NCBI RefSeq assembly: GCF_006345805.1
Contig: NC_043021.1
Span: 4,278,001-4,342,000 of the forward strand
DNA length: 64,000 bases
Direction of reading: 5' to 3'
Origin: Octopus sinensis
Lineage: Eukaryota
Notes under the pieces: model-generated
Seen by the model: the letters and a program-made list of their open reading frames with translations, nothing else
Told to the model about the DNA's origin: nothing
Databases searched by the model: none
Shown: positions 1,742 through 63,641 of the stretch, piece by piece
Layout: every line of letters begins with the position of its first letter
How positions within the stretch are numbered: the first letter of the stretch is position 1
Program-made: the position numbers and the translations under genes

Positions 1742-2156
1742 TACTCTTTACTCTTTTACTTGTTTCAGTCATTTGACTGCGGCCATGCTGGAGCACCGCC
1801 TTTAATCGAGCAACTCGACCCCCGGGACTTATTCTTTTTGTAAGCTCAGTACTTATTCTATCAGTCTCTTTTGCCGAACTGCTAAGTAACGGGGGACATA
1901 AACACACCAGCATCGGTTGTCAAGCAATGCTAGGGGGACAAACACAGACACACAAACACATACACACACATATATATATATATACATATATACGACAGGC
2001 TTCTTTCAGTTTCCGTCTACCAAATCCACTCACAAGGCATTGGTCAGCCCGGGGCTATAGCAGAAGACACTTACCCAAGATGCCACGCAGTGGGACTGAA
2101 CCCGGAACCATGTGGTTGGTTAGCAAGCTACTTACCACACAGCCAATCCTGCGCCT
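1742..2156 (-). mobile_element. SINE family A (tRNA head + CORE-like domain + internal microsatellite + LINE-derived tail), full length
   Basis: A-box tggctgtgtggta, B-box ggttcagtccc, CORE-like ttgggtaagtgtctt, tail ccagcatggccgcagtcaaatgactgaaacaagtaaaagag. Many near-identical copies in window. Confidence 0.9.
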
Positions 2157-2164
2157 ACGTGCAG

Positions 2165-2885
2165 ACATATAACAATAACCCTTTCTACTATAAGCACAAA
2201 GCCAGAAATTCTGTGGGAGGGAGCCAGTTGATTAGATCAACCCCAGTATGCAGCTGGTACTTAATTTATCGACCCCAAAAGGATGAAAGGCAAAATCGAC
2301 TTCGGCAGAATTTGAACTCAGAATGTAGCAGCAGATGAAATACCGCTAAGCATTTCACCCAGTGTGCTAACGATTCTGCCAGCTCGTCACCTTAGAGGCA
2401 TAATAATAATGATAATAATAATAATAATAATAATAATATAATAATAATAATTATAATTATAATAATGATCCTTTCTACTATAGGCACAAGGCCTGAATTA
2501 CATCAACTCCAGTGTTTCACTGGTGCTTAATATATCGACCCCGAAAGGATGAAAGGCAAAGTCAGCCTTGGCAGAATTTGAACTCAGAATATAGTGACAG
2601 GCAAAATACTGCTAAGCGTTTCATCCCAAGTGTCATCAATTCTGCCAGCTCACCATGATAATAATAATAATGATAATAATAATAATAATAACAATGGTTT
2701 TAAATTTTGCCACAAGGTCAGCAACTTTGGGACAGGGGATGAGTTGATTACATTGACCCCAGTTTTCAACTGGTACTTATTTTATTGACCCCTAAATGAT
2801 GAAAGGTAAAGTTGACCTCGGTAGAATTTGAACTCAGAACATAGTGATGGGCGAAATACCACTAAGCCTTTTGTCCAGCGCACTA
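2165..2885 (-). mobile_element. Three tandem SINE family C copies separated by (TAA)n
   Basis: Each has gaccccgaaaggatgaaaggcaaagtcgac and gaatttgaactcagaa. The domain may correspond to a Meta-SINE-type core (not verified). Confidence 0.8.
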
Positions 2886-3298: not shown

Positions 3299-3990
3299 AT
3301 CATCATCATCTAATGTCCATTGTCCGTACTAGCATGGGTTGGACAGTGTGACCAGACTTGGTAAGCTGGGGGGCACCAGACTCCAGTCTGATTTGGTATG
3401 GATTCTACAGCTGGATGTCCTTCCTAACGCCAACCCCTTTACAGTGTGCTGGATGCTTTTACATCGTACCACATGGACACTTTAATGTGGCACCACCCAT
3501 GTGCTTTTATATGGCACTGAACAGGTGCTTTTATAAGGTACTTCACAGGCACTTTTATGTAGCACCACATGGGTGCCACACAGGTGCTTTTACATGGTAC
3601 TGCACAGGCACTTTTATGTAGCACCACATGGATGCCACACACGTGTTTTTACATTGTACTGCACAGGTGCTTTTATGTAGCACCACATGGGTGCCACACA
3701 CGTGTTTTTACATTGTACTGCACAGGTGCTTTTATGTAGCACCACATGGATGCCACACACGTGTTTTTACATTGTACTGCACAGGTGCTTTTATGTAGCA
3801 CCACATGGGTGCCACACACGTGCTTCTACATTGTACTGCACAGGTGCTTTTATGTAGCACCACATGGGTGCCACACACGTGCTTCTACATTGTACTGCAC
3901 AGGTGCTTTTATGTAGCACCACATGGGTGCCACACAGGTGCTTTTACATGGTACTGCACAGGCGCTTTTATGTAGCGCCACATAATTGCT
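3299..3990 (-). mobile_element. SINE family B ((GAT)n tail) with expanded 59-bp tandem array
   Basis: catcatcatc tail and ctggatgtccttcctaacgccaac domain; gtagcacc recurs every 59 bp from 3559 to 3972. Confidence 0.85.
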
Positions 3991-6386
3991 GCACAGGTGT
4001 TTTTACATGACACCACAACAATGTGCATTATTATTAAAGTAAAAATAAAGTGGAGAGCAAGCAGAATCCTCAGCACACAAGGCAAAATGCTTATGAGTAT
4101 TTCATCCAAGTTTATTTTTCTGGGTTCGTATTCCACTGAAGTCGGCTTTGCCTTTCATCCTTTTGGGGTTGACAAAATAAGTACCAGTTGAAGACTGAGG
4201 TCAATGCAATCAACTTAGCACCTCCCCTGAAATAGTTAGCCTTGTGCCAAATTTTGCTATCAGCATTTCATCCATATTTATGTTTGGAGTTCAAGTTGTG
4301 CTGAGGTCGACCTTGCTTTTCATCTTTTCAGCGTTGATGAAATAAGTATCAGTCAAGTACTGAGGTCGATGTAATTGATTTCCCCCTGCCTTCAAAAACT
4401 ACTGGCCCCATTGCCAAAATTTGAAATAAGGCAATGAGAAGCTAGAATTGTTGGTGTGCAAGACGAAATACTTAGCAGCATTTCTTCCAGCTTATGTAAA
4501 TGCTGCAAGCATAGTTGCAGGGTTAAGACAACATGGTCTTAGATGTGATCCTACTGAGCAAGAATTTTCTGTTATAGGTGCTGGTATGGCTATATGAGTA
4601 ATAAGCTTGCTTCCCAACCATGTGGTCTTGGGTTCAGTCCCACTGTGCAGCACCTTGAGCAAGAATCTTCTAGAGTAGATGTGGGCCAACCAATGCCTTG
4701 TGAGTGGATTTGGATTTGGTAAATGGAAACTGAAAAAGCCCTACATGTGTGCGTGCGTGTATTGTATGTGTTTGTGCATGTGTTGTATGCATGTGTGTGC
4801 ATGTGTTTTGCATGTGCAGTGTGTGTGAGTGTGTGCACATTTGGCCATGGTCACCTGATGACTGTTTTTGGTTTGTTTATGTCTCCATATTTTAGCAGTT
4901 CGGCAAGAGAGATCAACAGAATAGGCACCAGACTTTCAAAGTAAGTACTAGGGTTGAAGTGGCTAAACCCTTCATGGCAATGCCCCAGCATGACCACAGC
5001 ACAACGACTGAAACAAGTAAAAGAAAATAAAAGATGAAAGACGGCCTCAAGTTGACCAAAACCTTGTGAGTGATATTTGGCAGATTAAAAGCTCTGCAGA
5101 AACCTGTTGCATATCTTTGGTTTGATGTACATCATTGGAAGATGTGCACATCAAAAGTTTAAACTGGTGCATTCAAACAAATGCATATTTCATGCAATAT
5201 TTCTCTACCAAAGCTGCAAAGATGCCCTCTCGTCACTAACGTCATTGAAACTGCTACAAACCAGAGAATGGTCCATTGTAAGCTGATAATCGCAAATGAC
5301 ATATTGATATATTGTTCTCAAAATGCAAGACATGTGGTAAAAAAGAAATTTTAAGATATATACACCAGGGAATTCTACCGGGCAGAAAACACAGAAAAAA
5401 AAAACCTGTTCATTTTATGCTTTTGAAAATGGCAAATTTACATATTTTAGAACAAAAAAGTTCACCATCCTGCCAACACACTTACACACAGTGATGTGTC
5501 AAGAACGTTTTTCCAAAGATAAAAGAATTTCCTATCAGCACTAAGACTAAAATCAGGCAGCTGGCAGTTCCCAGACATTAATCATTAGTCAACAGCAAAA
5601 TCATTTGGAAATAACCATTTGTTTCATTACTTTGACAGATTCACTTTAACAAACAAGCTTTGCAATTAGAATAATTATAGCCACATAATATTAGCTGTTA
5701 GCAGTAGCAGCAGCAGTAGTAGTAGTAGTAGAGGAGGAGGAGGAGGAAGGCAGTGAATTTTAAAGAATCAGTGGAGTACTGGGTAAAAAAAGGGTTAATG
5801 CTCTGAGTTCAAATCCTATTGCGATAAACATTGCCATGTCGTTCTTTCACGGTCGATGAAAATAAAGTACCAGTCATATACTGGGGCCAATATAATTAAC
5901 TGACTGTTCTTCCCACCACCACAAATTTATGGCCTTCTTTCAAATATAAGTAGTAGTAGTGGTGATGGTGGTGGTTAGGGTTAGGGTGATAGTAGTAGTA
6001 GTGGTGGTGGTAGTGATAGTGGTGGAGGTAGTGGTGGTGGTAGTAGTAGTAGTAGTGGTAGCAACAACAGCGGTGGTGGTGGTGGTGGTGGTGGTGGTAG
6101 TAAGGCAATGGACTGGAAGAATCAGTGAAGTGCCAAGGGAGAATAAAAAGCCTTATGGTATTTCTGTTCCGAGTTCAAATCTTGCCAAGATCAACTTCGT
6201 CTTTCATCCTTCAATGGTTGATAAAATAGAGTACCAGTCATACACTGGGGTCAATATGACTAACTGTATCTCATACCACCACCACCACCACCACTACCAC
6301 CACAAATTTCTGGCTTTGTGCCTTTCTAAGAAATTATCGTAACCAGTAGCAGCAACAGTCGTATTAATAGTAACAGCAGCAGCAAC

Positions 6387-6761: not shown

Positions 6762-7117
6762 CTTTTACTCTTTTACTTATTTCAGTCATTTGACTGCGGC
6801 CATGCTGGAGCACCGCCTTTAGTCAAGCAAATCGACCCCGGGACCTATTCTTTGTAAGCCCAGTACTTATTCTATCAGTCTCTTTTGCCGAACCGCTAAG
6901 TGACGGGGACGTAAACACACCACCATCGGTTGTCAAGCAATGATAGGGAGACAAACACAGACACACAAACACACATACACATACATATATATACATATAC
7001 GACAGGCTTCTTTCAGTTTCTGTCTACCAAATCCACTCACAAGGTATTGGTCGGCCCGGGGCTATAGCAGAAGACACTTGCCCAAGATGATGCCACGCAG
7101 TGGGACTGAACCCGGAA
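6762..7117 (-). mobile_element. SINE family A, 5'-truncated
   Basis: Near-identical to 1742-2156. Confidence 0.9.
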
Positions 7118-7319
7118 ATTTTTTTTATACTTTTGCTTTTAAAATTATAAATATGGAAATGTAACCACTACATAGTAGTTTTACTCATCCCAATTTAGTC
7201 ATTCTTATATCCATTTTTCCGTACTAGTAGAAGACACTTACCCACACAGTGAATTGAACTCAAAACCTTGTGGTTGGGAAGTAACTTCTTAATCACATAA
7301 CCATGCCTCTGCACATTTG

Positions 7320-12172: not shown

Positions 12173-12562
12173 TACTCTTTTACTTGTTTCAGTCATTTGA
12201 CTGCGGCCATGCTGGAGCAAATCGACCCCGGGACTTATTCTTTTTGTAAGCCCAGCACTTATTCTATTGGTCTCTTTTTGCCGAACTGCTAAGTAACGGG
12301 GACGTAAACACACCAGCATCGGTTGTCAGGCAATGCTAGGGGGACAAACACAGACACACAAACACACACACACATACATATATATATATACATATATACG
12401 ACAGACTTCTTTCAGTTTCCGTCTACCAAATCCACTCACAAGGCATTGGTCGGCCCGGGGCTATAGCAGAAGACACTTGCCCAAGATGCCACACAGTGGG
12501 ACTGAACCCGGAACCATGTGGTTGGTTAGCAAGCTACTTACCAGACAGCCACTCCTGCGCCT
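12173..12562 (-). mobile_element. SINE family A
   Basis: Near-identical to 1742-2156, small internal deletion. Confidence 0.9.
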
Positions 12563-13393
12563 ATGTATCATCATCATCATTTAATGTCCACTTTTCCATG
12601 CTTGCATGGGTCAGACAGATTTTGTCAAGGCAGATTTTCTACAGTTGGATGCTTTTCCTGTTGCCAACCATCACCTGTTTCCATGTAATGTAATATTCCC
12701 CATGACCAGATATGTTTTCACACATATTAACTTATTAGATGGTATCTATGAAGATTGATCATTGGCATTTACTGGTATTTAATTCTTTTCTACTAGAGGC
12801 ATAAGGCCCGCAATTTTGGGGGAGGAAGCCAGTCGAATAGATCGACCCTAGTACATAACTGGTACTTAATTTATCAACCCTGAAAGGATGAAAGGCAAAG
12901 TCAACCTTGGCAGAATTTGAACTTAGAACATAAAGACAGACGAAATACCACTAAGCATTTCACCCAACGTGCTAATTTTTTGTGCCTGATGCGAAAGAAC
13001 ATGCTAACTATATATTAATTAAACTATAATCTAAACAGTTAATTATAAGTTGTGAAAGATACCAGTACTGTTATATATAAGCTAAGTATGAATTTCTAAG
13101 GGTATAAAAATTAGGCTTTTTCATAAAGGCTATTAAAAAATAATAAAATGATCAGGTGAGGTAGAACACCATAGAAAAGGAATAAAATAAATGTCAACTC
13201 CCTCAGCCCCTTTCCTAACTGACACTGCTCCCTGTTCCTTGGCCTTAGATTTTGATATACAAAAATTTGATAAACAAGAAACTTGCCAGGAAAAGGAGCA
13301 AAATATAAGGCGAGACCATTAGTAAATGGACAAGGGGTGGATGGATACATACGTGCGTGCGTGCGTGCGTACGTACGTACGCACATACATACA

Positions 13394-13558: not shown

Positions 13559-13599
13559 TGTGTGTCAGTGTATGCATGTGTGTGTGTGTATGTATATAT

Positions 13600-13644
<45 letters not shown>

Positions 13645-13704
13645 TATATATATGAGAAAATGAAATGACAAAGGAAAAACAATGGTTATGTTATGAACTT
13701 CTTT

Positions 13705-13785
13705 AGCTTACAGATGTTTCTGCTATAAGATGCAGTGAACCGATAGTTGAGTGCCTGAGTAACACCTTATAGCTTCATCAGAACC
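13705..13785 (-). ncRNA. Putative type I hammerhead ribozyme (Penelope-like), extended stem II
   Basis: GGTT-CTGATGA-A-GCTATAAGGTG-(30 nt)-CATCTTATAGC-A-GAAA-C-ATCT-GTA-AGCT: intact core, 11-bp stem II, 2-bp stem III, GUA cleavage triplet, 4-bp stem I. Confidence 0.65.
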
Positions 13786-15683
13786 TTGAATATGAAGCTA
13801 ATAAAGATCATAAAATAATCGTTTATTCCTTCGTCATCTCTTTTTCTTATTACCGCTCTATACTTGACTAATGCTTTGTTCAGAAGTGTATGTATATTGA
13901 GTTCTACACCAGGTTCTTAGCTTCAGAATGCCTAAGTGAAATACATGTATACATATATGTATTGTATAAATTGTCTGTAGACCTTGAGAGCTTGGGATCG
14001 ACTTGAAAACATTGTCGAGATTGATAAATTGATAAACAAATGAAAGATAAAGCTGTTTGTTCTTTGCCAATTATTTATTTGGCAGTTTTCTCGGCAGAAA
14101 AGGAATGAAAGAATTCGCTGACAATGTCTTTATCATATCAAACTGAACAACAATATCTTGCCTCGTCTATATTACATCTCTTTCTGTCCCTTTCATGAAA
14201 AGCTCCATTGATTTCAGATCCTTTATAATTTACGGCATGGTCTTTCAGCAGGCCATGATGATGTTAATAACGATGCTTATGGTGGAGGTGGTGAAGGTGG
14301 GATGGTGATCAGCATGGTGGCAGTGGTGGTTCCAAACTCCATCAACAGTAATAAGACGTCCTTGTGCAATCTAATTAATTGGCTAAGAGATTAAAGTGAA
14401 AACAAACATCTGATATCTTTTATCTTTTACTTGTTAGTCATTAGACTGTGGCCATGCTGGGGCACTGCCTTGAATGGTTTTAGTCAAACAAGTCAACCTC
14501 AGGACTTATGATTTTTTTTTTTAGTATGGTACTTGTTCTATTGGTCTCTTTTTCAGAACCAAGTTATGGGGATATAAACAAACCAACAGCAATTGCCAAG
14601 CAATGTAGTGGGGGACAAATACAGACACAAACGTACACACACAAAAATACACATATACAACAGGCTTCCATTGACTGCTGCCCAGTGGGATTGAACCCAA
14701 CACCACAAGGCTGCAAAGCAAGCTTCTTAATCACATAAGCAATGCCTGCCAGCAGTTGTTGCTTATCCCCAGAACAGACCTACAATCCCTAGCATTCCAG
14801 TTATGACCATCCTGTCAGTAGACCTAGAAGTATATAGGAACATCATCATCTAAAGTGTCGTTTTCTTAATTAAAATACTTGTGTTTGAAGAGAGATTTGA
14901 CTGCTATTTCTAGCTTGTCAATTTACAGTAAAGAGGTTTTGTGAATGGTCTGTGGCATTGTAAACCTTCATGTCAGTTAAGATGTTTCCAAGAGACAATC
15001 TAGTGTTGTCTGTCCCCTTCAAGAAAATGATTTCGAAATGTATTCATTGTCACAGATCATCATCATCATCATTTAACATCTGTTTTTCCATGCTGGCATG
15101 GGTTGGATGTTTTGACAGGGTCTGGTAAGTTCCAGGGCCAGTGTCAGCTTTGGTGAGGTTTCTATGGTTGGATACCCTTCCTTAATGCCAATCGTTTACA
15201 GTGTGGATTGGGTGCATTTTTTATGTCAGAGGCTGTCGAGTAACTTGCAAGACAAAAACAGAACAAATAAAAAGGAAAGGAAATAGGGGAAAAAATCTCC
15301 CCACCCCAGGGGGGGGGGATTTGAAGGAGGATGGTTGTTTCATGCCAAGGAACAAGCACAGGTGTCTTGCTATAAAAGAGATACATGACTACCCTGCATC
15401 ATATAAGGGTGGGCAAGAGGATATTAATACTATAAACATACAGTTACTTCATATATTAGTATGATACAGCTTGGTCAAAGTTCTCTTTGCAGTCAGACAG
15501 TCTAGGTTCAATCTCAATTTTGTCCTATGTAATAGGACAAAATTAATAGTATTTATTCTCCACCGAAGCAAGGCTCGATAACCTCACTACCTCCTCCTAG
15601 TCAAAAAAAAAAAAAAAAAAAAATTCGGAGGGGTCTCTAATAAACCAGCCTGTGGCACCTTCCGCAAATATCTTTCACCATTG

Positions 15684-20665: not shown

Positions 20666-20877
20666 GGAAGCAGGCAAGGACTAGCATCCAGCCATAGAAA
20701 AATCTGCTTCAACAAATTCTATTTGATCCGTGCAAGCATGGAACACTGGACATTAAAGTGGCAAGGAGAATGGTGAAACTCATTTTCACAATTTCATCTC
20801 TCAACTAAAAAATGAATCTATCTAATTAATCCTTTAGCATTCAAATTATTCTATCAAATGAAATTCTTATTTATTCA

Positions 20878-21125
20878 CCTTGGCTGGCTTCCGTGCCGGT
20901 GGCATGTTAAAAGCACCATCCGATCGTGGCCGATGTCAGACCTCCCTGGCACCACGTAAAAAGCACCCACTACACTCGCGGAGTGGTTGGCATTAGGAAG
21001 GGCATCCAGCTGTAGAAACACTGCCAGATCAGACTGGAGCCTGGTGCAGCCCTGGCTTCCCAGACCCCGGTCGAACCGTCCAACCTGTGCTAGCACGGAA
21101 AACGGACGTTAAACGATGATGATGA
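20878..21125 (+). mobile_element. SINE family B
   Basis: ggcattaggaagggcatccagctgtagaaacac...ccgtccaacctgtgctagcacggaaaacggacgttaaacgatgatg. Confidence 0.85.
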
Positions 21126-22133: not shown

Positions 22134-22624
22134 ACGTGGGTAAATAAGATTTTCTTTTGATAGAATAAGGTGAATATGAAAGGGTTAAATTTGAACCTGT
22201 GATTTTAGGCTGTCACTAAGAGAAGGGGAAATACGAAGAGAGTGAGTGAGTGGGAGAGAGAGAGAGAGAGAGAGACTTATTCTGGTCAAGTTGTTTTGAT
22301 ACTCTATCCTATACCAGCAGTGACCCAATGAGCTGTTCAGGGTCATGGTACAGGTTTCCATAGCATAAAATCTATAGTTTCAGCAAAAGAAGTTAATTAT
22401 TAACATCCTTGTTTTCAAATGAATGGAGTGAATGAAAGATCTGTGTATGCAGAAAAGAGATGCAAAGAATACACAATGCCGTGTAACACAATACGACTGT
22501 CACGCACCTACCTGAACTGAACTAATTATTGATAAATACGAAGTAATTAGATAACTTTAATACCCTGTTGTGAAAGTGTTTATTGTCTCATTTTCCCCCC
22601 TCATGTCTTTGTATTTTATCTTTT

Positions 22625-23235: not shown

Positions 23236-23628
23236 CTGGTGTTACCATCCGAATCGTGGCCGATGCCAGCACCGCCTTGACTGGCTTCCGTGCCGGTGGC
23301 ATGTAAAATGCACCAATCCAATCGTGGCACATAAAAAGCACCATCCGATCGTGGCCGTTGCCAGCCTCACCTGGCACCTGTGCTGGTGACACATAAAAAG
23401 TACCATCCGATCGTGACCGTTGCCAGCCTCGCCTGGCACCTGTGCCGGTGGCACATAAAAAGCACCCACTACACTCACGGAGTGGTTGGCATTAGGAAGG
23501 GCATCCAGCTGTAGAAACATTGCCAGATCAGACTGGAGCCTGGTGCAGCCTTCTGGCTTCCCAGATCCCCAGTCGAACCATCTAACCCATGCTAGCATGG
23601 AGAACGGACGTTAAACGATGATGATGAT
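23236..23628 (+). mobile_element. SINE family B with ~3 internal repeat units
   Basis: Same body and (GAT)n tail; repeated accatccgatcgtggccgttgccagc units. Confidence 0.85.
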
Positions 23629-30621: not shown

Positions 30622-30964
30622 TCAATGGAAATTGCAGCTGTGATACCAGTGCCGGTGACAAGTAAGCGAACTATCCAATCGTGGCCATTGCCAGCTCCCC
30701 ACCCCCGACTGGCCTCCGTGCCGGTGGCACGTAAAAAGCACCATCCGTTTGTGTCCGTTGCCAGCTCCGTCTGGCACCTGTGCAGGTGGCACGTAAAAAG
30801 CACCCACTACACTCACGGAGTGGTTGGCGTTAGGAAGGGCATCCAGCTGTAGAAACACTGCCAGATCAGACTGGGCCTGGTGCAGCCTCCTGGCTTCCCA
30901 GATCCCCGGTCGAACCGTCCAACCCATGCTAGCATGGAAAACGGACGCTAAACGATGATGATGA
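30622..30964 (+). mobile_element. SINE family B
   Basis: Same body and tail, about 2 internal units. Confidence 0.85.
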
Positions 30965-31208
30965 TTTACTGAATTGTTACTCGTCACTGTTTCTCCATTT
31001 ATTGCAGAATATACACACACAACTATACACGCCTGTCCACATAACTTAGCAGTTTGGCAAAAGAGATTGATAGAATAAGTATCAGGCTTTAAAAAAAATG
31101 TACTGGGGTTGATTCATTCAGCTAAAATATAATTCAAGGCAGTGCCCCAGCATGGCCTCAGTCTAATGACTGAAACAAATAAATGATAAATGATATTAAG
31201 CAAATATA

Positions 31209-31432
31209 TACTCTTTACTCTCTTTTACTCTTTTACTTGTTTCAGTCATTTGACTGCGGCCAGGCTGGAGCACCACCTTTAATCGAGTAACTCGACCCCC
31301 AGGACTTATTCTTTGTAAGCCCAGTACTTATTCTATCGGTCTCTTTTGCCGAACCGCTAAGTGACAGGGACGTAAACACACCAGCATCGGTTGTCAAGCA
31401 ATGCTAGGGCGACAAACACAGACACACAAACG

Positions 31433-31468
<36 letters not shown>

Positions 31469-31644
31469 CACACATATATACAACAGGCTTCTTTCAGTTT
31501 CCGTCTACCAAATCCACTCACAAGGCATTAGTCGGCCCGGGGCTATAGCAGAAGACACTTGCCCAAGATGCCACGCAGTGGGACTGAACCCGGAACCATG
31601 TGGTTGGTTAGCAAGCTACTTACCACACAGCCACTCCTGCGCCT
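31209..31644 (-). mobile_element. SINE family A, full length
   Basis: Near-identical to 1742-2156. Confidence 0.9.
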
Positions 31645-32156
31645 GCTTTCACCCAGCCCTGCACTACACATACATGCAGGTACAGAAAACCATATTTATA
31701 AAGTAATGTCAAAGTAAGCAAAGAAGGAGGCACCACATGGTAGTTTGATCTGCTATAAACAGGAGCCAAATCTCCCTCAAATCTCTCTCACATCTTAATT
31801 ATTCAGAAATGTGTCAGGATGAATGGAGCTTAAATTAGTGGATTAATTAATTTAGAGTAGAATTAAAATAGCAAAAGTGGATTATGAGATCCCATGTCAG
31901 TGAGAAAATATTTCAGGAACCTAATTCCTAATTGCTTCTGTGTAGTGTAGCTTTGAAGAATAAGAAGGTCTTCTAGGAGAGAAGAGACTTGCATGCATGG
32001 AGAACTGCCAGTCTCCCCACAAAATATGAAAGCAAAGTCGACCTCAGTGGAATTTGAACTAAGAACATAGAGGCAGATGAAATCCCACTAAGTATTATGT
32101 CCAGCGTAGTAACAATTCTGCCAGCTCATCACTACAATAATAATAATAATAATAAT

Positions 32157-35269: not shown

Positions 35270-35742
35270 TATTTCGACCTTCTTTGGTCTTGTCAATGAA
35301 AGCCACTCAACCACTAGAAGTAGCAGTAACTCATCTCGCCACCAGAAAAGTTGCTGGTGTCACAATTGGCCAGTGTCACAGGTGGTTGGATGGAACTTAC
35401 ACTCGCCTCCTTATGAGAGCTCAAAATCTCTCGTGGAAGCATCATCCAACCAAAGTACAAATATATGGGAAATTACCACCTGTATCATCTCTTGTGAAAG
35501 GTAGAAGAGTCCAGTTTGCTGGACATTGTTGTAGAGCTGAAAACAAGGTAATTTCTACTCTTCTCCTCTGGAAGCCATCTGCTCACGATACCAGAGGGCA
35601 CACACTCTCCTACCCTGATGTAATCTCCAGGGATACAGGCATCCAGCAACAGGACCTCCGTAATGCTATGATGGACCGTGAAGTCTGGCGTAACATAGTA
35701 AATTCCATTGTCTCGACCACAGTCGAACAATGATGATGAGCT
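35270..35742 (+). mobile_element. RTE-type LINE 3' end, open ORF2 C-terminus and (GAT)n tail
   Basis: LDGTYTRLLMRAQNLSWKHHPTKVQIYGKLPPVSSLVKGRRVQFAGHCCRA...REVWRNIV then tgatgatga. Confidence 0.85.
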
Positions 35743-36299: not shown

Positions 36300-37480
36300 G
36301 AGGCAGTGGTCGTGGTGGTAGGTGATGATGGTGGTTGGTAGGTGGCAGTGGTGGTGGTGATAGTAGTGGAGGTGGTGGTGATGGTGTCAGTGATAGTGGT
36401 GGTGGTAGTAGTGGGTGTTGGTGATAGTAAGTGGTGGTGGGGGTGGTGGTGATGGTGGTGGTAGGTGATGATGATGGTTGGTAGATGGTGGTAGGTGGCA
36501 GTGGTGGTGGTGATAGTAATAGTGGAGATGGTGGTGTTAGTAGTGGAGGTGATGGTGGTGTCAGTGATGGTGGTGATAGTGGTGGTGGTAGTAGTGGGTG
36601 TTGGTGATAGTAGTGGGTGTTGGTGGTAGTAGTGGGTGTTGGTGATAGTAGTGGGTGTTGGTGGTAGTAGTGGGTGTTGGTGATAGTAAGTGGTGGTGGT
36701 GGTGGTGGTGGTCTTGTCGTCAGTGGTCAACTGGTAGGTGATGATGGTGTTGGTGATGGTGATGTTGGCAACGGTGGTGGTGGTGGCAGTGGTGATAATA
36801 GTGCTGGCAATGGTGGCAGGTGGCAGTTGTAGTGGTGGTGGTGGTAGGTGGCAGTGGTGATAGTAGTAGTGGAGATGGCGGTGATAGTAGTGGAGGTGGT
36901 GGTGGTGATGGTAGTGATAGTGGTGGTGGTAGTAGTGGGTGTTGGTGATAGAAAGTGGTGGTGGTTGTCGTTGTCGTCAGTGGTCAACTGGTAGATGATG
37001 GTGGTGGTGGTGATGTTGGCAACGGTGGTGGTGGCAGTGGTGATAATAGTATTGGCAATGGTGGCAGGTGGTAGTTGTAGTAGTGGTAGTAGTGGTGGTG
37101 GTGGTAGTAGTAGTGGGTGTTGGTGATAGTAAGTGGTGGTGGTGGTGGTTGTCGTCAGTGGTCAACTGGTAGATGATGGTGGTGGTGGTGATGTTGGCAA
37201 CGGTGGTGGTGGCAGTGGTGATAATAGTATTGGCAATGGTGGCAGGTGGTAGTTGTAGTAGTGGTGGTAGTGGTGGTGGTGGTAGTAGTAGTGGGTGTTG
37301 GTGATAGTAAGTGGTGGTGGTGGTGGTTGTCGTCGTCGTCAGTGGTCAACTGGTAGATGATGATGATGATGGTGATGTTGGCAACGGTGGTGGTGATTGT
37401 GGCGGTGATAATAGTGTTGGCAATGGTGGCAGGTGGTAGTTGTAGTGGTGATGGTGGTGGTGGTGGTGTTTGCTTCGGCA
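36300..37480. repeat. (GGT/AGT/GAT)n block with higher-order ~178-257-bp units
   Basis: Anchor cagtggtcaactgg at 36721, 36978, 37156, 37340. Confidence 0.9.
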
Positions 37481-37819: not shown

Positions 37820-37840
37820 CTGCATATATACATATGTATG

Positions 37841-37879
<39 letters not shown>

Positions 37880-37886
37880 TATACAT

Positions 37887-37927
<41 letters not shown>

Positions 37928-38022
37928 TATATACATAATATTATATATATATATACATATTATACATATATATACATATATATACATATCCACTATATAT
38001 ATATATATACATATATATATAC

Positions 38023-38055
<33 letters not shown>

Positions 38056-38275
38056 ACATATATATACATATATAGTATACATATATATACATATATATAC
38101 ATATATACATATATACATATATACTATATACATATATATATACTATATATATATATATACATATATATACATATATATATATATATATACAATATATATA
38201 TATATACATATATATACATATATATATATATATATACATATATATACATATATATATATATATACATATATATAC

Positions 38276-38311
<36 letters not shown>

Positions 38312-38323
38312 TACATATATAAC

Positions 38324-38364
<41 letters not shown>

Positions 38365-38383
38365 CATATAATATATACATATA

Positions 38384-38420
<37 letters not shown>

Positions 38421-38423
38421 CCC

Positions 38424-38488
<65 letters not shown>

Positions 38489-38489
38489 C

Positions 38490-38521
<32 letters not shown>

Positions 38522-39586
38522 TTATATATATATAATATATATATATATATACTATATAATATCTATATATATGACGTGAAACTGGATAACACTGGCCCAG
38601 AAGAATTGCAATCCCTGAGTCAAAATCAGTGCGTGACCTGGGTTGACATGAGCAATGATGCATCTTTCCAAATGCATATTGCTAATCTGGTGATAAAATG
38701 CAGACGGCTAGCTGGATGGATTCTCCGAACTTCAGAACAAGAGAGAAGGAGACACTGATGGTCCTATGGAAAACATTTGTCCTCAGCCGCTTGGACTACT
38801 GCTCCCAACTTTGGTCACCACACAATATAAAACAAACAGCAGAACTCGAAGCACTCAGAGAAGCTACACAAAGAAAATCGTCTCAATGCAAATGTCAGCT
38901 ACTGGGAAGACTGAAGGTATTAAACCTCTTCTCCCTGAGCGAGGCGGGAGAGATATGCAGTAATATACATCTGGAAAATCCTGGAGGTCTTATCCCAAAC
39001 TTTGGCACATTCAAGTTACTCCAACCGCAGAACGGGGCGCCGCTGCGTGGTGCCAAGGATTCCAACATCACCATCAAAATACAGGTCCGATACTGCAACA
39101 GCTTGGTTTCAGAGGACCACAGCTTTTCAACATCCTCCCTAATCCTGAGAGACTTACATGGTGTGGATGTGGGTTCTTTAAAACTAAACTGGATCTCTTC
39201 TTGTTGGAAGTCCCAGATGAACCTACCTCACGACAGGAGACGCGGATGCGGGCAGCAGCATCGAACTCCCTTGTTGATCAAGTGCCACGTATCAGAGGTG
39301 GATTCACAAACTAGTGTGGCTCATTCAGCGGTGGTGGCCCCAGCATGGCCCGCGGCCTTCGGGCTAAAACATTTTTTTAAGGATTTATATATACATATAT
39401 ATATATATATACATATATATATATCTATACATATATATATATATATATATATACATATATATAATACATATTATATACATCATATATATATACATATATA
39501 TATATATACATATATATATATACATATATATATACATATATATATTCCATATATATATATATATATATATACATATATATATCTAC

Positions 39587-39635
<49 letters not shown>

Positions 39636-39661
39636 CATATATATATACATATATATAAGAC

Positions 39662-39697
<36 letters not shown>

Positions 39698-39854
39698 CAT
39701 ATATATATACATATATTACATATATATATATACCATATATACATATATATATCTATATATATATATATATAACATATATATACATATATATATATATATA
39801 TATCGATATATACATATACATATAAATATCCATATTATATATATACATATACTA

Positions 39855-39886
<32 letters not shown>

Positions 39887-39982
39887 CATATATATATATC
39901 TATATATATATATACATATATATATATACCTATATATATATATATATACATATATTATATATACTATATATATATATATATA

Positions 39983-40025
<43 letters not shown>

Positions 40026-40140
40026 TATACATATCGATATATATATATATATATACATATATATACATATATATATACATATATAATATACATATATATT
40101 ACATATATATATATATACATATATAATATATATCTTATAC

Positions 40141-40171
<31 letters not shown>

Positions 40172-40449
40172 TCCATATATATACTTATAATGCATATATT
40201 TATATATAGTATCATATATATACATATATATATATATAACCTCTATATACTATATATATATACATATTATAGATATATACTATCTATACATATATCTATA
40301 TACATATTATATATTATAACAGATATATACATATATATATATACTATATATATATATATACATATATATATACATATATATATATACATATATATATCTA
40401 TACATATATATATATATACATATATATATATCCATATATATATATATAC

Positions 40450-40499
<50 letters not shown>

Positions 40500-40654
40500 C
40501 TATACATATTATATACCTATATATATATATATCCTATAATCTATATATATAATACATATATATATATATACATATATCCATATCATATATATACATATAT
40601 ATATATACACTATATATATATCTATATACATATAATATATATATACATATATAG

Positions 40655-40685
<31 letters not shown>

Positions 40686-40707
40686 CATATAATATATAAT
40701 ACTATAG

Positions 40708-40743
<36 letters not shown>

Positions 40744-41721
40744 CATATATCTATATATATATCACTATATATATTCTATACTATATATATATATACCTAC
40801 TAATCTCTATTACATATATTATATATATACTATATATATACATATATAATATACAATATAATATATATCTATCTATATATATACTATATATATCTATATA
40901 TATCTATATATATAATACATATATATATATATATATATACACATATATAATATATACTCTACATATATACATATATATATATATAACTCTATATATATAC
41001 ATATATATGAATATATATATATATTCTATATAGATATACCGTATATATCATATACATATATATATACATATATATTATACATATATACATATACATATAT
41101 ACTAATTATACATATATTATATTATACATATCTACATATATATATATACATATCTATATCATATATATATAGCTATATATATATACATATATATACTATA
41201 TCTATACCTATATATATATACATATATATATAATATATATACATCTATATATATACTATATACATTATATATATACATATATATATATACATTATATATA
41301 TATATATCATATATATCTATATATATATATATATATATATATATGATATATATATATATAATATATATATATACACCTATATATCCCTATATATATCATC
41401 ATAATATACATATATATAGTATATATCTACTATATATATATAATACCTATATATATATCTATATATACCATATATATATATGCTATATCTATATATACAC
41501 TATATATATATATATATACATATACCTATATCTAATAATATATATATACATATACATATATATATTATATATATATACATATATATATCTATATATATAT
41601 ATATATATTATATATATATACATACATATATATATATATATATATAACATTATATATATATATACATATATATATATATACATATTATATATATACATAT
41701 CATACATATATATATATCTAC

Positions 41722-41753
<32 letters not shown>

Positions 41754-41912
41754 ACTATATATACATATATATATATCTATACATAATATTATATTATATA
41801 CATATATATATATATAACATATCTACATATATTATACATATATATATATATACATATAACATATATATATACATATATACATATATATATACATATATAC
41901 ATATATATATAC

Positions 41913-41945
<33 letters not shown>

Positions 41946-42038
41946 CATATAGTATATACATATATACATATATATATAATATATACATATATATATAACA
42001 TATATACATATATATATACATATATATATATATATACC

Positions 42039-42069
<31 letters not shown>

Positions 42070-42076
42070 GATATAC

Positions 42077-42125
<49 letters not shown>

Positions 42126-42300
42126 CATATATAATATATATTATACATATATTATATAATATATATACATATATTATATATATATATATATTATATATAT
42201 ATTATATTATATATCCATATATGTATATATATATATATATGTATATATATATACATATATACATATATTATATATATGATCTATATAATATATATAACAT
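37820..42300. repeat. ~4.5-kb degenerate (TA)n/(TATATACA)n block, split by a LINE fragment
   Basis: Visible directly; source of the many YI-repeat ORFs. Confidence 0.97.
38573..39385 (+). mobile_element. CR1/L2-like LINE 3' portion inserted in the (TA)n block
   Basis: [28 protein letters not shown] / [29 protein letters not shown] / GPQLFN-type motifs; multiple frameshifts. Confidence 0.85.
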
Positions 42301-43986: not shown

Positions 43987-44362
43987 GCCCATTGCTCATG
44001 TCATCATCATTGTTCGACCGTGGTCGAGACAATGGAATTTACCATGCTACGCCAGACTTCACGGTCCATCATAGCATTACGGAGGTCCTGTTGCTGGATG
44101 CCTGTATCCCTGGAGATTACATCAGGGTAGGAGAGTGTGCGCCCTCTGGTATTGCGAGGAGATGGCTTCCAGAGGAGAAGAGTAGAAATTATCTCGTTTT
44201 CAGCTCTACAACAATGTCCAGTAAACTGGACTCTTCTACCTTTCACAAAAGATGATACAGGTGGTAATTTCCCATATATTTGTACTTTGGTTGGATGACG
44301 CTTCCACGAGAGATTTTGAGCTCTCATAAGGAGGCGAGTGTAAGTTCCATCCAACCGCCTCT
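43987..44362 (-). mobile_element. Second copy of the same RTE-type 3' end
   Basis: Translation near-identical to 35284-35733. Confidence 0.85.
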
Positions 44363-47659: not shown

Positions 47660-47776
47660 CTGAGAAGAGACTGACATTTTTGTCCTGACTAACTGTTTTT
47701 CTAAATGGAGCCTCTCTTTGGCAGCTTGCTTAATAATTGCTTCGAGTTCTTCTTGATCTTCATAAAGACGAGAATT
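47660..47776 (-). CDS. RIMBP: Coiled-coil coding exon (117 nt, phase 0-0) of the same gene
   Basis: Acceptor catttttcttcag, donor CAG|gtaaga. Translates NSRLYEDQEELEAIIKQAAKERLHLEKQLVRTKMSVSSQ. Confidence 0.82.
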
Positions 47777-48627: not shown

Positions 48628-48807
48628 CTGTGGAAGTTGTTTTGACATGGAGCTAATTTTTTCTGCTAATATCTGGTATTGCCTTTTTAATTCTTCAATT
48701 TCTTTCTCTTTCGCCAATAAACTCTTTGAATACTCAGCATGTTCTCGTGCTCTCTGTTTTTGAAATTGTTTTCTAACTGATTCTGTATCATGGCTTTCAC
48801 CAGATTT
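48628..48807 (-). CDS. RIMBP: RIM-binding-protein-like gene, coding exon (180 nt, phase 0-0)
   Basis: Acceptor tttttttttacacag, donor CAG|gtaagt. Translates KSGESHDTESVRKQFQKQRAREHAEYSKSLLAKEKEIEELKRQYQILAEKISSMSKQLPQ, resembling recalled TSPOAP1 RQRARDLSETASALLAKDKQIAALQRE. Confidence 0.85.
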
Positions 48808-49157
48808 CTGTGTAAAAAAAAACCAAATTATTTCATCAGGCCATGTTCTTCAATAAATCTGATCCTTCCATCCACATTCAGGTAAAAAAAAAAAAAGGTA
48901 ACTACTATATCCAAAAATGGTATAAAGGTATCCAAATTAAAGATGAAGAGAAAACAAATTCATACAGCTCCTACAATCACTTGAGAATGGTTTTAATGGT
49001 TCTCTGGGTCAAGATAATGGGGAACCAATTGATAAGTCAGTCCTAATGAAGATATATCCAATAACTACAACTGTAGGAAGCATGTTAACGATAAGAAGAG
49101 GTGAATTAATAAGAATGGTGAATAGAAAACAGTGGACTGAGAGTATTCTGAAGGAAA

Positions 49158-57646: not shown

Positions 57647-57764
57647 ATAGGAGAAGGAAAGATCCAGAGAAGGGAAGACAGAGGAAAAGATCGCCAACGG
57701 TACACACGCAGTCACACATACACATACAATTCTTTTTCCCAAATACATTGCACTTCATATTCAA

Positions 57765-57803
57765 GGCTCTGATGAAGCAATAGAGCAAAAACAGTTGTAA
57801 GCT
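57765..57803 (+). ncRNA. Degenerate hammerhead, same family as 13705-13785
   Basis: GGCT-CTGATGA-AGCAATAGAGCA-AAAA-C-AGTT-GTA-AGCT. Flanks atattcaagg and gaagttcataa...gtcatttcattttct are shared with the 13.7 kb copy. Confidence 0.55.
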
Positions 57804-58759
57804 AATGAAGTTCATAATTATATTATGTTTTTAACTTGTCATTTCATTTTCTTTTATATATAAGTTGTCTAAGAATTTCACTAGTCAGAATTCATAAGTC
57901 ACCATATATTTTTCCATGCCTACCATCTCTGAAGAGCACACGGTCTTAGTTAAACGACCGGTTACCTAGTATACAGTGCAAAACTGACCGATAAGATCAG
58001 CTGAAATGGATTTATAATACTGTATACTTTGTTTAACATACGTGAAATGACAGACAGATAAGCAGTAACAAGAAAACAAGTTTTCAGACAAGGTAACTTA
58101 ATTAAATGTTGGTGGACTGAACAAACTTATCACCTGTTACAGATGATTTTATTTTTCTTTGTTTATTGATTACATTAGTAATTATGATTTACATTTTGAA
58201 TTTTTCTTTGGTATGTTCACTTCTCTTTAGCTACCGCCACCACCACCACCATCACAACAATTAGTATTCATTTTTATTATATTATTTGTAAGTGCTGTTG
58301 TTGCCACTTAACTAAAGCAACTCAATAACATGATGGAGATATCGGTAAATCATGTGGTTATAAACGTAAATGAACATATTATATCACAATCAATACACAC
58401 AAGACACAGAACATTAAGACACAAATAAAATTCCAACTCAAAAGCGAAACCTGAAGATGGAAGAGAGAACAGTGAGGTGGGGACAATACAGTATTATATA
58501 TATATATAAATATACATATATAAGGAATTTCTTGGGTTTTATTTCTCTGTGTATTTATGTTTGTGTGCTTGTGTGTGTGTATAAATATGTGTGTGTGTGT
58601 GTGCGTGTGGGTGAAGACAAGTGATCTGTGTTATCTACTGCAATTAGAAGTAAACCTAAGCCAAAAGTGTACCCAAGCCAAGGGTAAAAGCATACCCAAG
58701 TTGAAAGTGAACCCAAGTCAAAAATAGATGTGTGTAAATGTACACAATTAAGGTTAGAG

Positions 58760-61119: not shown

Positions 61120-61223
61120 AATCTGCTTCAACACACAACTTCACATAAGGAATCTTGGCAACACAAATTCATATATATATATATATATATATATGATTTT
61201 TGTGTTTGTGTGTGTATACATAC

Positions 61224-61355
61224 CTTGAGGTTTTGCTGCTGTAGAATCTTTGCTTTGTCCTCTAGTCTTCGAGCAACAGCTGCTAATTCTGCATTTCTCT
61301 TACGGAAGGACTTTAGCTTTTCTTCACGAGATTTGTAATCTTCTTGTTTCCTTTT
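61224..61355 (-). CDS. RIMBP: RIM-binding-protein-like gene, coding exon (132 nt, phase 0-0)
   Basis: Acceptor ttatttgtgtag, donor AAG|gtatgt. Translates KRKQEDYKSREEKLKSFRKRNAELAAVARRLEDKAKILQQQNLK, resembling my recollection of the TSPOAP1/RIMBP coiled-coil motif KNAELAVIAKRLEERARKLQETNL. Confidence 0.85.
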
Positions 61356-63640: not shown

Positions 63641-63641
63641 T

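What the first reader, a model, noticed from the sequence alone, without database searches (positions are those of the whole stretch)
13652..13800. Core-intact hammerhead ribozyme, sense to the RIM-BP-like pre-mRNA, with an unusually extended stem II
Seen: on the gene strand, GGTT-CUGAUGA-A-[11-bp stem II, 30-nt loop]-A-GAAA-C-AUCU-GUA-AGCU, with all invariant core bases and a GUA triplet. A relative at 57765 has a short stem II, so this copy gained about 40 nt while keeping perfect pairing. Established: Penelope-like elements carry minimal type I hammerheads, and some intronic hammerheads in vertebrates have been domesticated. Inference: this copy may cleave the nascent transcript of a presynaptic gene. 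Caveats: A-A mismatch at the base of stem II, and short stems I and III.
Basis: partly seen in the sequence, partly recalled or inferred. Interest (0 to 1): 0.8.

Follow-up and report, generated by a model that had tools for sequence, protein, structure and literature searches.

The report
Decayed retroelement hammerhead in octopus intron
The hammerhead-ribozyme motif is really there, but it is best read as an old copy of a small mobile element sitting in a long intron of a RIM-BP-like gene. Its predicted fold hides the cut site, so it is ordinary rather than a domesticated gene-cutting ribozyme.

Summary
The motif is exactly as described. On the minus strand it reads CUGAUGA (13781-13775), an 11-bp stem II with a 30-nt loop, GAAA, a 2-bp helix III, then GUA with the predicted cut at 13709|13708. 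Such a motif occurs once in the window against 0.04 per shuffled window.

It lies sense to a RIM-BP-like gene, whose three minus-strand exons are 52% identical to a snail RIMS-binding protein 2. It appears to sit in an intron of at least 47 kb.

It is one of three copies of a short repeat. The forward unit is 13797-13654. An inverted partial copy is 13795-13847. A paralogue at 57753-57852 is antisense to the gene and dead (G12 to A).

Several features match Penelope-like-element and retrozyme hammerheads: an extra base after A9, a long helix II, a tiny helix III, an adjacent inverted truncated copy, and a (TA)n flank.

The claim that this copy "gained 40 nt" is not supported. The short copy keeps one strand of stem II and cannot form it, so a deletion there is more likely.

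Cleavage of the pre-mRNA is unlikely. The inverted arm pairs with the cut site (P 0.81-0.998). Helix III is weak, an A·A sits at the base of stem II, and no Rfam hammerhead model matches. Nothing requires selection.

The parts
13654..13797 (-). Forward unit of the repeat family (144 nt): 5' CUUCAUAUUCAAGG..., the hammerhead motif, a 55-nt tail ending ...CAUUUCAUUUUCUC, followed directly by (TA)n
   Evidence: Reading. Alignment with the paralogue shows homology starting at CTTCAT and ending at TTTTCT in both. nhmmer E 3e-45 (self-match).
13775..13781 (-). Core box C3-A9 (CUGAUGA). A13774 is the extra or unpaired base that follows it.
13722..13773 (-). Stem-loop II: 11 bp (13773-13763 with 13722-13732, one G·U) closing a 30-nt loop that is itself partly paired. 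A13721 lies between it and G12.
   Evidence: Pair probabilities 0.83-0.99. Predicted in every fold.
13709..13720 (-). G12 A13 A14 (13720-13718), A15.1 (13717), C15.2 (13716), loop AUCU (13715-13712), G16.2 (13711), U16.1 (13710), A17 (13709). Predicted scissile bond 13709|13708.
   Evidence: Helix III pair probability is only 0.02 in the locus context.
13698..13708 (-). 3' strand of helix I. AGCU (13708-13705) pairs with GGUU (13785-13782) and includes two G·U. AAGAAG (13703-13698) pairs with CUUCAU (13797-13792) at 5 of 6 positions.
   Evidence: The paralogue has GGCU/AGCU and CUUCAU/AUGAAG fully paired.
13795..13847 (+). Inverted, 5'-truncated third copy holding the tail only. It abuts the forward unit head to head. 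Its inner end falls at the position of the scissile bond within 1 nt, with 2-3 nt of overlap (AGCU/CUU).
   Evidence: Three-way alignment A2. nhmmer E 2.8e-5. blastn.
13654..13847 (-). Long imperfect hairpin formed by the inverted copy and the forward tail (about 55 bp of arms). In it UUAGCUU (13801-13795) pairs with AAGCUAA (13709-13703), covering A17 and positions 1.1-1.6.
   Evidence: -63.2 kcal/mol, z -6.6, 0 of 200 shuffles as stable. Pair list. Pair probabilities 0.81-0.998.
13560..13653 (.). (TG)n/(TA)n microsatellite that directly adjoins the 3' end of the forward unit
57753..57852 (+). Paralogous unit (100 nt), antisense to the host gene. It has CUGAUGA at 57769-57775, a collapsed stem II (GC/GC, 6-nt loop), G12 changed to A (57788), helix III CAGUUG and GUA at 57797-57799.
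   Evidence: nhmmer E 3.4e-24. 84% identity to the forward unit, Jukes-Cantor distance 0.18.
61221..61355 (-). Host-gene exon (coiled-coil part of a RIM-BP-like protein)
   Evidence: tblastn with P0001: 73% identity over 45 aa, E 5e-15. Search result.
48631..48816 (-). Host-gene exon
   Evidence: tblastn E 2e-9.
47669..47776 (-). Host-gene exon, the last one seen before the hammerhead in the direction of transcription
   Evidence: tblastn E 4e-6.

Best explanation
The motif is a decayed single copy of a small non-autonomous retroelement. The element carries a minimal type I hammerhead of the kind found in the terminal repeats of Penelope-like elements (PLEs) and in animal retrozymes.

What the locus holds. 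The element inserted next to a (TA)n microsatellite in a long intron of a RIM-BP-like gene. It went in as a composite: one forward unit plus an inverted, 5'-truncated copy. That arrangement is expected if both cut DNA ends primed reverse transcription, as shown in vitro for one PLE enzyme (inferred here).

What the ribozyme is for. In the element's own life cycle the hammerhead would process element transcripts, probably as a dimer through a once-palindromic helix III. CAGCUG is inferred as the ancestor of CAUCUG here and CAGUUG in the paralogue.

What happens in this host transcript. The motif is a passenger. The RNA is predicted to fold into a long hairpin in which the inverted copy pairs with the cut site. 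The ribozyme is therefore held in an inactive fold and does not measurably cut the pre-mRNA.

Stem II. The long stem II is most simply the family's original helix II or a subfamily form of it. The short version at 57.8 kb is a deletion remnant.
For: Shown by tools or by reading:
- The motif and its helices.
- Three related copies in the window, with shared 5' and 3' unit boundaries.
- Head-to-head inverted partial copy and a long hairpin: -63.2 kcal/mol, z -6.6.
- (TA)n directly at the 3' end.
- The cut site sequestered by the inverted arm, P 0.81-0.998.
- The hammerhead-compatible ensemble fraction is 2e-12 for the 216-nt locus and 5e-7 for a 116-nt construct.
- Copies are 84% identical, Jukes-Cantor 0.18.
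- The forward copy carries only 2 unique changes in 53 tail sites, so an intact 36-nt core plus stem II is expected by chance about 0.16 of the time.
- The host gene and its strand.

From papers:
- PLE minimal hammerheads have a base between A9 and 10.1, a large helix II (6-8 bp), a short helix I (4-5 bp), a palindromic 15.2-16.2 and loop 3. They occur mostly as scattered single motifs, sometimes as pairs on opposite strands 100-700 bp apart, and show no detectable monomer cleavage (PMC4209133).
- PLE insertions often carry an adjacent inverted 5'-truncated copy. (TA)n is listed among preferred PLE targets, and the insertion bias toward (TA)n is documented for Naiads. The figure legend there places hammerhead motifs near PLE 3' ends (PMC8557442).
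- A PLE enzyme cleaves and extends both DNA strands (PMC11167929).
- Animal retrozymes are proposed PLE derivatives with consensus lengths of 51-972 bp, and 44% of Xenopus tropicalis copies overlap introns (10.64898/2026.07.22.740005).
- PLEs are a major repeat class in octopus, with a burst at Jukes-Cantor 0.2 (PMC13282606).
Against: - No PLE reverse transcriptase or GIY-YIG reading frame was found in the window. Pfam was negative on the ORFs tested. No further family members could be fetched, so the link to PLEs rests on architecture, not on sequence homology to a known PLE.
- No Rfam hammerhead model matches either copy, even at E up to 10.
- An extra A lies between C11.1 and G12 (read another way, an A·A pair at 10.1-11.1). 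This is not part of the published minimal-hammerhead consensus.
- Both full copies start at the same base. That is unusual for random 5' truncation and fits a discrete short element better than a truncated full-length PLE.
- The energy model ignores hammerhead tertiary contacts and co-transcriptional folding. Predicted inactivity is therefore an inference, not a measurement.
Confidence: 0.75

Rival explanations
1. Domesticated or incidentally active intronic ribozyme. The copy folds as a hammerhead in the nascent RIM-BP-like transcript and cuts it at 13709|13708, affecting the gene's expression.
For: - All invariant core bases are present with A17, and stem II is uninterrupted.
- The motif is sense to the gene.
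- A natural hammerhead with a mismatch at the base of helix II and a 2-bp helix III still cleaves 22% in one hour as a monomer (axolotl HHR_Amex2, PMC7229834).
- The forward copy is the least decayed of the three tails.
Against: - The inverted arm competes for the cut site with a perfect 7-bp duplex inside a roughly 55-bp hairpin. The hammerhead-compatible fold is 15 kcal/mol less stable.
- Helix III is 2 bp, and its loop AUCU is not palindromic, so dimers are also disfavoured.
- Helix I has two G·U pairs and an A·A mismatch.
- An 11-bp stem II puts loop II out of reach of helix I for the tertiary contact that fast natural hammerheads need (established knowledge of the fold; see the PMC4209133 introduction).
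- There is no Rfam match.
- An intact core is compatible with neutral decay.
- Conservation in other species could not be tested.
Confidence: 0.05
2. Miniature inverted-repeat DNA transposon (MITE). The 194-bp palindromic unit 13654-13847 is one element with about 53-bp terminal inverted repeats inserted at a TA. The hammerhead-like centre is incidental.
For: - Long inverted arms and a very stable hairpin.
- TA-rich sequence at both outer ends.
- Tc1/mariner elements and MITEs are abundant in octopus (PMC13282606).
Against: - The paralogue at 57753-57852 has the centre and one arm only, with a clean boundary at the same base (CTTCAT) where the forward unit begins. The unit is therefore the asymmetric 100-144-nt sequence, not the palindrome.
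- A full hammerhead layout is shared by both copies and is rare by chance.
- The arms differ in decay, 2 against 8 unique changes.
Confidence: 0.1
3. Chance resemblance. The repeat family never encoded a ribozyme, and the core boxes are coincidental.
For: - No Rfam hammerhead hit for either copy.
- There are only two full copies, and no compensatory double changes can be counted.
- An extra A lies 3' of stem II.
Against: - One hit in the window against 0.04 per shuffle, and 0 of 200 shuffles with a stem II of at least 8 bp.
- Both copies keep CUGAUGA, the UA at 16.1-17 and the two-part helix I. A U/C difference at position 2.2 keeps pairing with G1.2.
- The helix III sequences are each one step from the palindrome CAGCUG.
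- An extra base after A9 is a published hallmark of PLE hammerheads (PMC4209133).
Confidence: 0.1

Closest known systems
Minimal type I hammerheads of Penelope-like elements (Cervera and de la Pena 2014, PMC4209133)
   Same: - CUGAUGA and GAAA core, with an unpaired base right after A9.
- Helix II longer than the canonical 4 bp, and a short proximal helix I (4 bp).
- Helix III reduced to 2 bp with a 4-nt loop that is one change from palindromic.
- Occurrence as scattered single copies and as close pairs on opposite strands.
- The locus also shows the PLE insertion signature of an adjacent inverted 5'-truncated copy beside a (TA)n tract (PMC8557442).
   Different: - Stem II is 11-12 bp with a 30-nt loop, against 6-8 bp in the published families.
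- An extra A separates C11.1 from G12.
- No PLE reading frame or pseudo-LTR could be linked to it.
- Both copies have a fixed 5' boundary.
Animal non-LTR retrozymes and SINE-like hammerhead elements such as Schistosoma Sm-alpha (PMC7229834; 10.64898/2026.07.22.740005)
   Same: - A short non-coding unit (100-144 nt, inside the reported 51-972 bp range) built around a type I hammerhead.
- Monomer copies dispersed in the genome, often in introns.
- Helix I with an internal loop followed by a distal stem.
   Different: - No tandem array here.
- None of the loop 1-loop 2 contacts of canonical type I hammerheads can be recognised.
- No evidence of circular RNA.
[quoted passage not shown]
   Same: A sense-strand hammerhead motif inside an intron of a protein-coding gene.
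   Different: - Those are single-copy, ultraconserved across species, have a stable helix III, cleave as monomers and have Rfam models.
- This one is a repeat copy with a weak helix III and no Rfam match.
- Its conservation could not be tested.

Membership tests
Hammerhead ribozyme (any type) | Invariant core: C3 U4 G5 A6 N7 G8 A9, G12 A13 A14, A15.1-U16.1, H17 | tested here: met
   Read directly at 13781-13775, 13720-13717 and 13710-13709. Passes the descriptor scan.
Hammerhead ribozyme (any type) | Three helices around the core | tested here: met
   Helix II is 11-12 bp. Helix I is 4 bp (two G·U) plus a distal 5 of 6. Helix III is only 2 bp. The layout is present, but helices I and III are weak.
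Hammerhead ribozyme (any type) | G10.1-C11.1 pair stacked directly on the core | tested here: not met
   A13774 and A13721 flank the first G-C pair. This reads either as an A·A at 10.1-11.1 or as an extra base on both sides. The paralogue shares it.
Hammerhead ribozyme (any type) | Match to a curated covariance model (Rfam Hammerhead_1, _3, _II, HH9, HH10) | tested here: not met
   No hammerhead hit at gathering score or at E up to 10 in searches of 701, 201 and 116 nt.
Hammerhead ribozyme (any type) | Site-specific Mg2+-dependent self-cleavage | not testable with these tools
   Needs a bench assay. Thermodynamic prediction disfavours the active fold.
PLE minimal hammerhead (PMC4209133) | Unpaired base between A9 and 10.1 | tested here: met
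   A13774, and A57776 in the paralogue.
PLE minimal hammerhead (PMC4209133) | Enlarged helix II and short helix I | tested here: met
   Helix II is 11-12 bp, longer than the published 6-8. Proximal helix I is 4 bp.
PLE minimal hammerhead (PMC4209133) | Palindromic 15.2-16.2 and loop 3 that allow a dimeric helix III | tested here: inconclusive
   C15.2-G16.2 pair. The helix III sequence is CAUCUG here and CAGUUG in the paralogue. Neither is palindromic, and each is one change from CAGCUG. The ancestral palindrome is inferred.
PLE minimal hammerhead (PMC4209133) | Location in the terminal repeat of an element encoding RT and GIY-YIG endonuclease | not testable with these tools
   No such frame in the window. 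No cephalopod genome or repeat library could be reached. A metagenome scan gave only chance bacterial matches.
PLE insertion architecture (PMC8557442, PMC11167929) | Adjacent inverted 5'-truncated copy; insertion at a (TA)n microsatellite | tested here: met
   Inverted tail copy at 13795-13847 abutting the forward unit. (TA)n directly 3' of the unit. The paralogue is followed by a short TATATATA.
Non-LTR retrozyme (PMC7229834) | Tandem repeats of the unit, each with a hammerhead | tested here: not met
   Single units only. No tandem copy by blastn, nhmmer or TRF.
Domesticated intronic hammerhead (HH9/HH10 type) | Single-copy and conserved across species | tested here: not met
   It is a member of a repeat family. 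Cross-species conservation is not testable with these tools.

The most novel reading that the evidence does not exclude
The copy is a conformationally gated ribozyme. The long hairpin normally masks the cut site. When the hairpin is opened or remodelled in neurons, for example by helicases or by A-to-I editing of the double-stranded arms, the hammerhead fold forms. It then cuts the RIM-BP-like pre-mRNA inside its giant intron and tunes output of a presynaptic gene.
Probability: 0.03. Interest if true: 0.75.

Novelty: new member of a known kind. Interest (0 to 1): 0.15.

Why it matters
As it stands, this adds one more example, in a cephalopod, of the very numerous retroelement-borne minimal hammerheads of animal genomes. 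The full-text library holds no paper describing hammerheads in octopus.

Two details have some value for people who study these elements:
- The inner end of the inverted copy coincides, within 1 nt, with the predicted cut site. That would fit reverse transcription running off a self-cleaved RNA.
- Stem II here is far longer than in the published families.

Neither changes the picture of the host gene. If the copy were shown to cut the RIM-BP transcript, it would be a rare invertebrate case of a ribozyme acting on a neuronal pre-mRNA. The evidence here points the other way.

Tried and rejected
- Rfam scans of the whole window at gathering score, and of 701-, 201- and 116-nt pieces at E up to 10, gave no hammerhead family. 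The only hits were microsatellite-driven mir-297/mir-466 matches below gathering score.
- I tried to fetch more family members in three ways. Exact-protein look-ups of chance ORFs next to both copies found nothing on record. A metagenome scan for TTCAAGGNTCTGATGAAGC returned 57 loci. None has GTAAGCT downstream, and most look like GC-rich prokaryotic sequence, so I take them for chance matches. Supplements of the PLE and octopus-repeat papers hold no usable sequences.
- The protein database returned only a snail RIM-BP and no cephalopod protein, so orthologous introns could not be reached.
- Pfam on 87 non-repeat minus-strand ORFs from 1-47.6 kb, and on nine longer ORFs, gave no domains. No downstream exon and no PLE frame was found.
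- A borderline fourth relative at 22321-22416 (nhmmer E 0.047) was inspected. It is too degenerate to say anything about the ancestral stem II.
- I considered selection on the core and set it aside. The forward copy has decayed only about 5%, so an intact core is unremarkable. The hammerhead part and the tail do not differ clearly in identity between copies, 87% against 81%.
Full report
**Observation.** On the minus strand the window reads as follows:
- GGUU, 13785-13782
- CUGAUGA, 13781-13775
- A, 13774
- GCUAUAAGGUG, 13773-13763
- a 30-nt loop
- CAUCUUAUAGC, 13732-13722
- A, 13721
- GAAA, 13720-13717
- C AUCU G, 13716-13711
- U A, 13710-13709
- AGCU, 13708-13705

This is the layout of a type I hammerhead.

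I wrote a descriptor and scanned both strands. It required CUGANGA, up to one extra base on either side of a stem II of at least 4 bp, GAAA, a closed helix III, UH, and a helix I of at least 4 bp. It finds this site and nothing else in the window. Two hundred dinucleotide-preserving shuffles gave a mean of 0.04 hits, and none had a stem II of 8 bp or more.

**Three corrections of detail.**
- The 11 pairs of stem II include one G·U.
- Helix I is not only GGUU/AGCU. After an internal loop, CUUCAU (13797-13792) pairs with AAGAAG (13703-13698) at five of six positions.
- The "relative at 57765" (57753-57852, + strand) has AAAA where GAAA should be, that is G12 changed to A. It is therefore a dead copy.

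**Host gene.** Three open stretches on the minus strand, joined, match "RIMS-binding protein 2, partial [Biomphalaria glabrata]" at 52% identity over the full 139 aa, E 8.6e-27. tblastn places them at 61355-61221, 48816-48631 and 47776-47669. The hammerhead at 13.7 kb is on the same strand and downstream of the last of these.

I looked for a further exon between 47.6 kb and the start of the window. I took all minus-strand open stretches of at least 35 aa that are not low in complexity and not repeated elsewhere in the window, and scanned them against Pfam. There were no hits. The SH3 and fibronectin-type domains that define RIM-BP proteins (established knowledge) have not yet appeared in the reading frame, so the gene must continue beyond the window. 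The site is then inside an intron of at least 47 kb. The strand is shown; the intronic position is inferred. The paralogue at 57.8 kb lies on the + strand, antisense to the gene.

**It is a repeat copy.**
- blastn and an nhmmer profile find three related pieces in the window: the forward unit 13797-13654 (-), the paralogue 57753-57852 (+), and a partial copy 13795-13847 (+).
- The two full units begin at the same base (CTTCAT...) and end at the same place (...CATTTCATTTTCT). There is no similarity beyond either boundary.
- Apart from a 41-44-nt length difference inside stem II, the two units are 84% identical, Jukes-Cantor 0.18.
- The partial copy is the last about 53 nt of the unit, the tail from the cut site onward. 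It is in inverted orientation and abuts the 5' end of the forward unit head to head.
- The forward unit is followed directly by a (TG)n/(TA)n microsatellite (13560-13653). The paralogue is followed by a short TATATATA.

**What kind of element.** The published description of hammerheads in Penelope-like elements lists these features (PMC4209133):
- a base between A9 and 10.1;
- a large helix II (6-8 bp);
- a short helix I (4-5 bp);
- a very small helix III with palindromic 15.2-16.2 and loop 3;
- occurrence mostly as scattered single motifs "probably related to truncated PLEs";
- pairs on opposite strands 100-700 bp apart;
- no detectable cleavage by a single motif in vitro.

Other papers add to this picture:
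- PLE insertions are described as often having "an inverted 5'-truncated copy" next to them, forming inverted repeats. (TA)n is listed among preferred PLE targets, with the insertion bias documented for Naiads. A figure legend places hammerhead motifs near the 3' ends (PMC8557442).
- A purified PLE enzyme cleaves and extends both DNA strands (PMC11167929). This gives a mechanism for such inverted twins.
- Animal retrozymes are proposed derivatives of PLE terminal repeats. They have consensus lengths of 51-972 bp and many monomer copies, and 44% of copies in Xenopus tropicalis overlap introns (10.64898/2026.07.22.740005).
- PLEs are one of the main repeat orders in Octopus vulgaris, with an expansion at Jukes-Cantor 0.2 (PMC13282606).

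The locus matches this picture point by point: the extra A after A9, a long helix II, a 4-bp proximal helix I, a 2-bp helix III, the inverted truncated twin and the (TA)n flank. The two helix III sequences, CAUCUG here and CAGUUG in the paralogue, are each one change from the palindrome CAGCUG, which I infer as the ancestral state.

I therefore read the site as a decayed unit of a small hammerhead-bearing retroelement of the PLE/retrozyme kind. Two things could not be shown:
- Sequence homology to a known PLE. No PLE reading frame is in the window and no cephalopod sequence could be fetched.
- A match to any Rfam hammerhead model.

An extra A between C11.1 and G12 is shared by both copies. It is not part of the published consensus. 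The nearest precedent I found is the U·U mismatch at the base of helix II in the axolotl HHR_Amex2 (PMC7229834).

**The long stem II.** The paralogue has AGCAAUAGAGCA where this copy has AGCUAUAAGGUG...CAUCUUAUAGCA. The paralogue keeps a recognisable 5' strand (GCAAUAG against GCUAUAAG). It has lost the loop and nearly all of the 3' strand, leaving two possible base pairs. No hammerhead works with such a helix II, and that copy is also dead at G12.

A deletion in the paralogue needs one event. A gain here needs an insertion whose end happens to complement at least five pre-existing bases, or a fold-back duplication. A borderline fourth relative at 22321-22416 (nhmmer E 0.047) is too degenerate to help.

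**Would it cut the pre-mRNA?**
- The 216-nt locus folds into a long imperfect hairpin: -63.2 kcal/mol, against -36.8 ± 4.0 for shuffles, z -6.6.
- In that fold the inverted arm's UUAGCUU (13801-13795) forms a perfect duplex with AAGCUAA (13709-13703). That covers A17 and positions 1.1-1.6, with pair probabilities of 0.81-0.998.
- Helix I of the hammerhead has probability near 0 and helix III 0.02.
- The best hammerhead-compatible structure is -47.9 kcal/mol, and that ensemble holds 2e-12 of the total. Even for a 116-nt construct without most of the arm, the fraction is 5e-7, and the overall fold is no more stable than shuffles, z -1.3.
- These numbers ignore tertiary contacts and folding during transcription, so they are an indication and not a measurement.
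- They add to other weaknesses: a 2-bp helix III with a non-palindromic loop, two G·U pairs and an A·A mismatch in helix I, the A·A at the base of helix II, and a stem II too long for a loop II-helix I contact.
- No second copy lies on the same strand within reach to form a dimer.

**Is the intact core evidence of selection?** Using the three tails, the forward copy has 2 unique changes in 53 sites. The inverted copy has 8 and the paralogue 7. At about 5% decay, 36 positions (core plus stem II) stay untouched about one time in six. The hammerhead part and the tail do not differ clearly in identity between the two full copies, 87% against 81%. Nothing requires selection by the host.

**A point noted on the way.** The inner end of the inverted copy falls at the cut site within 1 nt. 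The arm ends ...UUAGCU, and the forward unit begins CUUCAU with 2-3 nt of overlap. This would fit reverse transcription running off the 5' end of a self-cleaved RNA, and so would be a trace of ribozyme activity in the element's life cycle. It is a single observation. It is also confounded by the fact that helix I makes the two ends similar, which favours joining at that spot.

**Verdict.** This is a new member of a known kind and of low interest. It would rise only if orthologous introns or RNA-end mapping showed conservation or cleavage.

Noticed in passing
window 13795-13801 (junction of the inverted copy and the forward unit): The inverted tail copy ends at the predicted hammerhead cut site within 1 nt, with 2-3 nt of overlap with the forward unit. 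This could be reverse transcription running off a self-cleaved RNA, or joining at microhomology.
   Followed up: partly
window 22321-22416 (+): Borderline fourth relative of the hammerhead-bearing repeat (nhmmer E 0.047). The core boxes are degenerate. It has a short CCATAG...CTATAG hairpin where stem II would be.
   Followed up: partly
window 37824-38572 and 39386-42296: A very large imperfect (TA)n tract, about 3.7 kb in two blocks. It surrounds a 375-aa ORF (38698-39825, +) that looks by eye like a LINE reverse-transcriptase remnant but has no Pfam hit.
   Followed up: partly
window 35284-35733 (+) and 44007-44354 (-): Two near-identical ORF remnants in opposite orientation (...RVQF.GHCCRAEN..ISTLLLWKPS...DREVWR...), flanking the (TA)n tract. 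They look by eye like 3' ends of a non-LTR retrotransposon. No Pfam hit.
   Followed up: partly
window 3521-4008: Tandem array of a 59-bp unit: 8.3 copies, 94% matches.
   Followed up: no
window 1927-2172, 6940-7164, 12333-12584, 31401-31706, 46144-46401 and others, both strands: Many copies of one short interspersed repeat. They are recognisable from the recurring translation ...RHLPK.PRSGTEPGT.WL.SKLLTTQP... . This is probably an abundant octopus SINE.
   Followed up: no
window 20875-21096, 23242-23598, 30622-31020, 52333-52593, 55402-55886: A second abundant repeat family (translation ...FLQLDALPNANHS.SVVGAFYVPPAQ...). It includes internal 62-67-bp tandem units at 23324-23466 and 55456-55832.
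   Followed up: no
window 63256-63745 (-): Two adjacent ORF remnants (...SADQKDTRVSVAEDLL...) that resemble by eye a mariner-type transposase N-terminus. No Pfam hit.
   Followed up: partly
window 36306-37468: About 1.1 kb of GTG/GTA-rich triplet repeats with a 178-bp higher-order unit, 3.1 copies.
   Followed up: no
window 13568-13648: The (TG)n/(TA)n microsatellite next to the element gives sub-threshold Rfam matches to mir-297 and mir-466 (39.8 and 27.8 bits, against gathering scores of 90 and 85). These are composition artefacts.
   Followed up: yes
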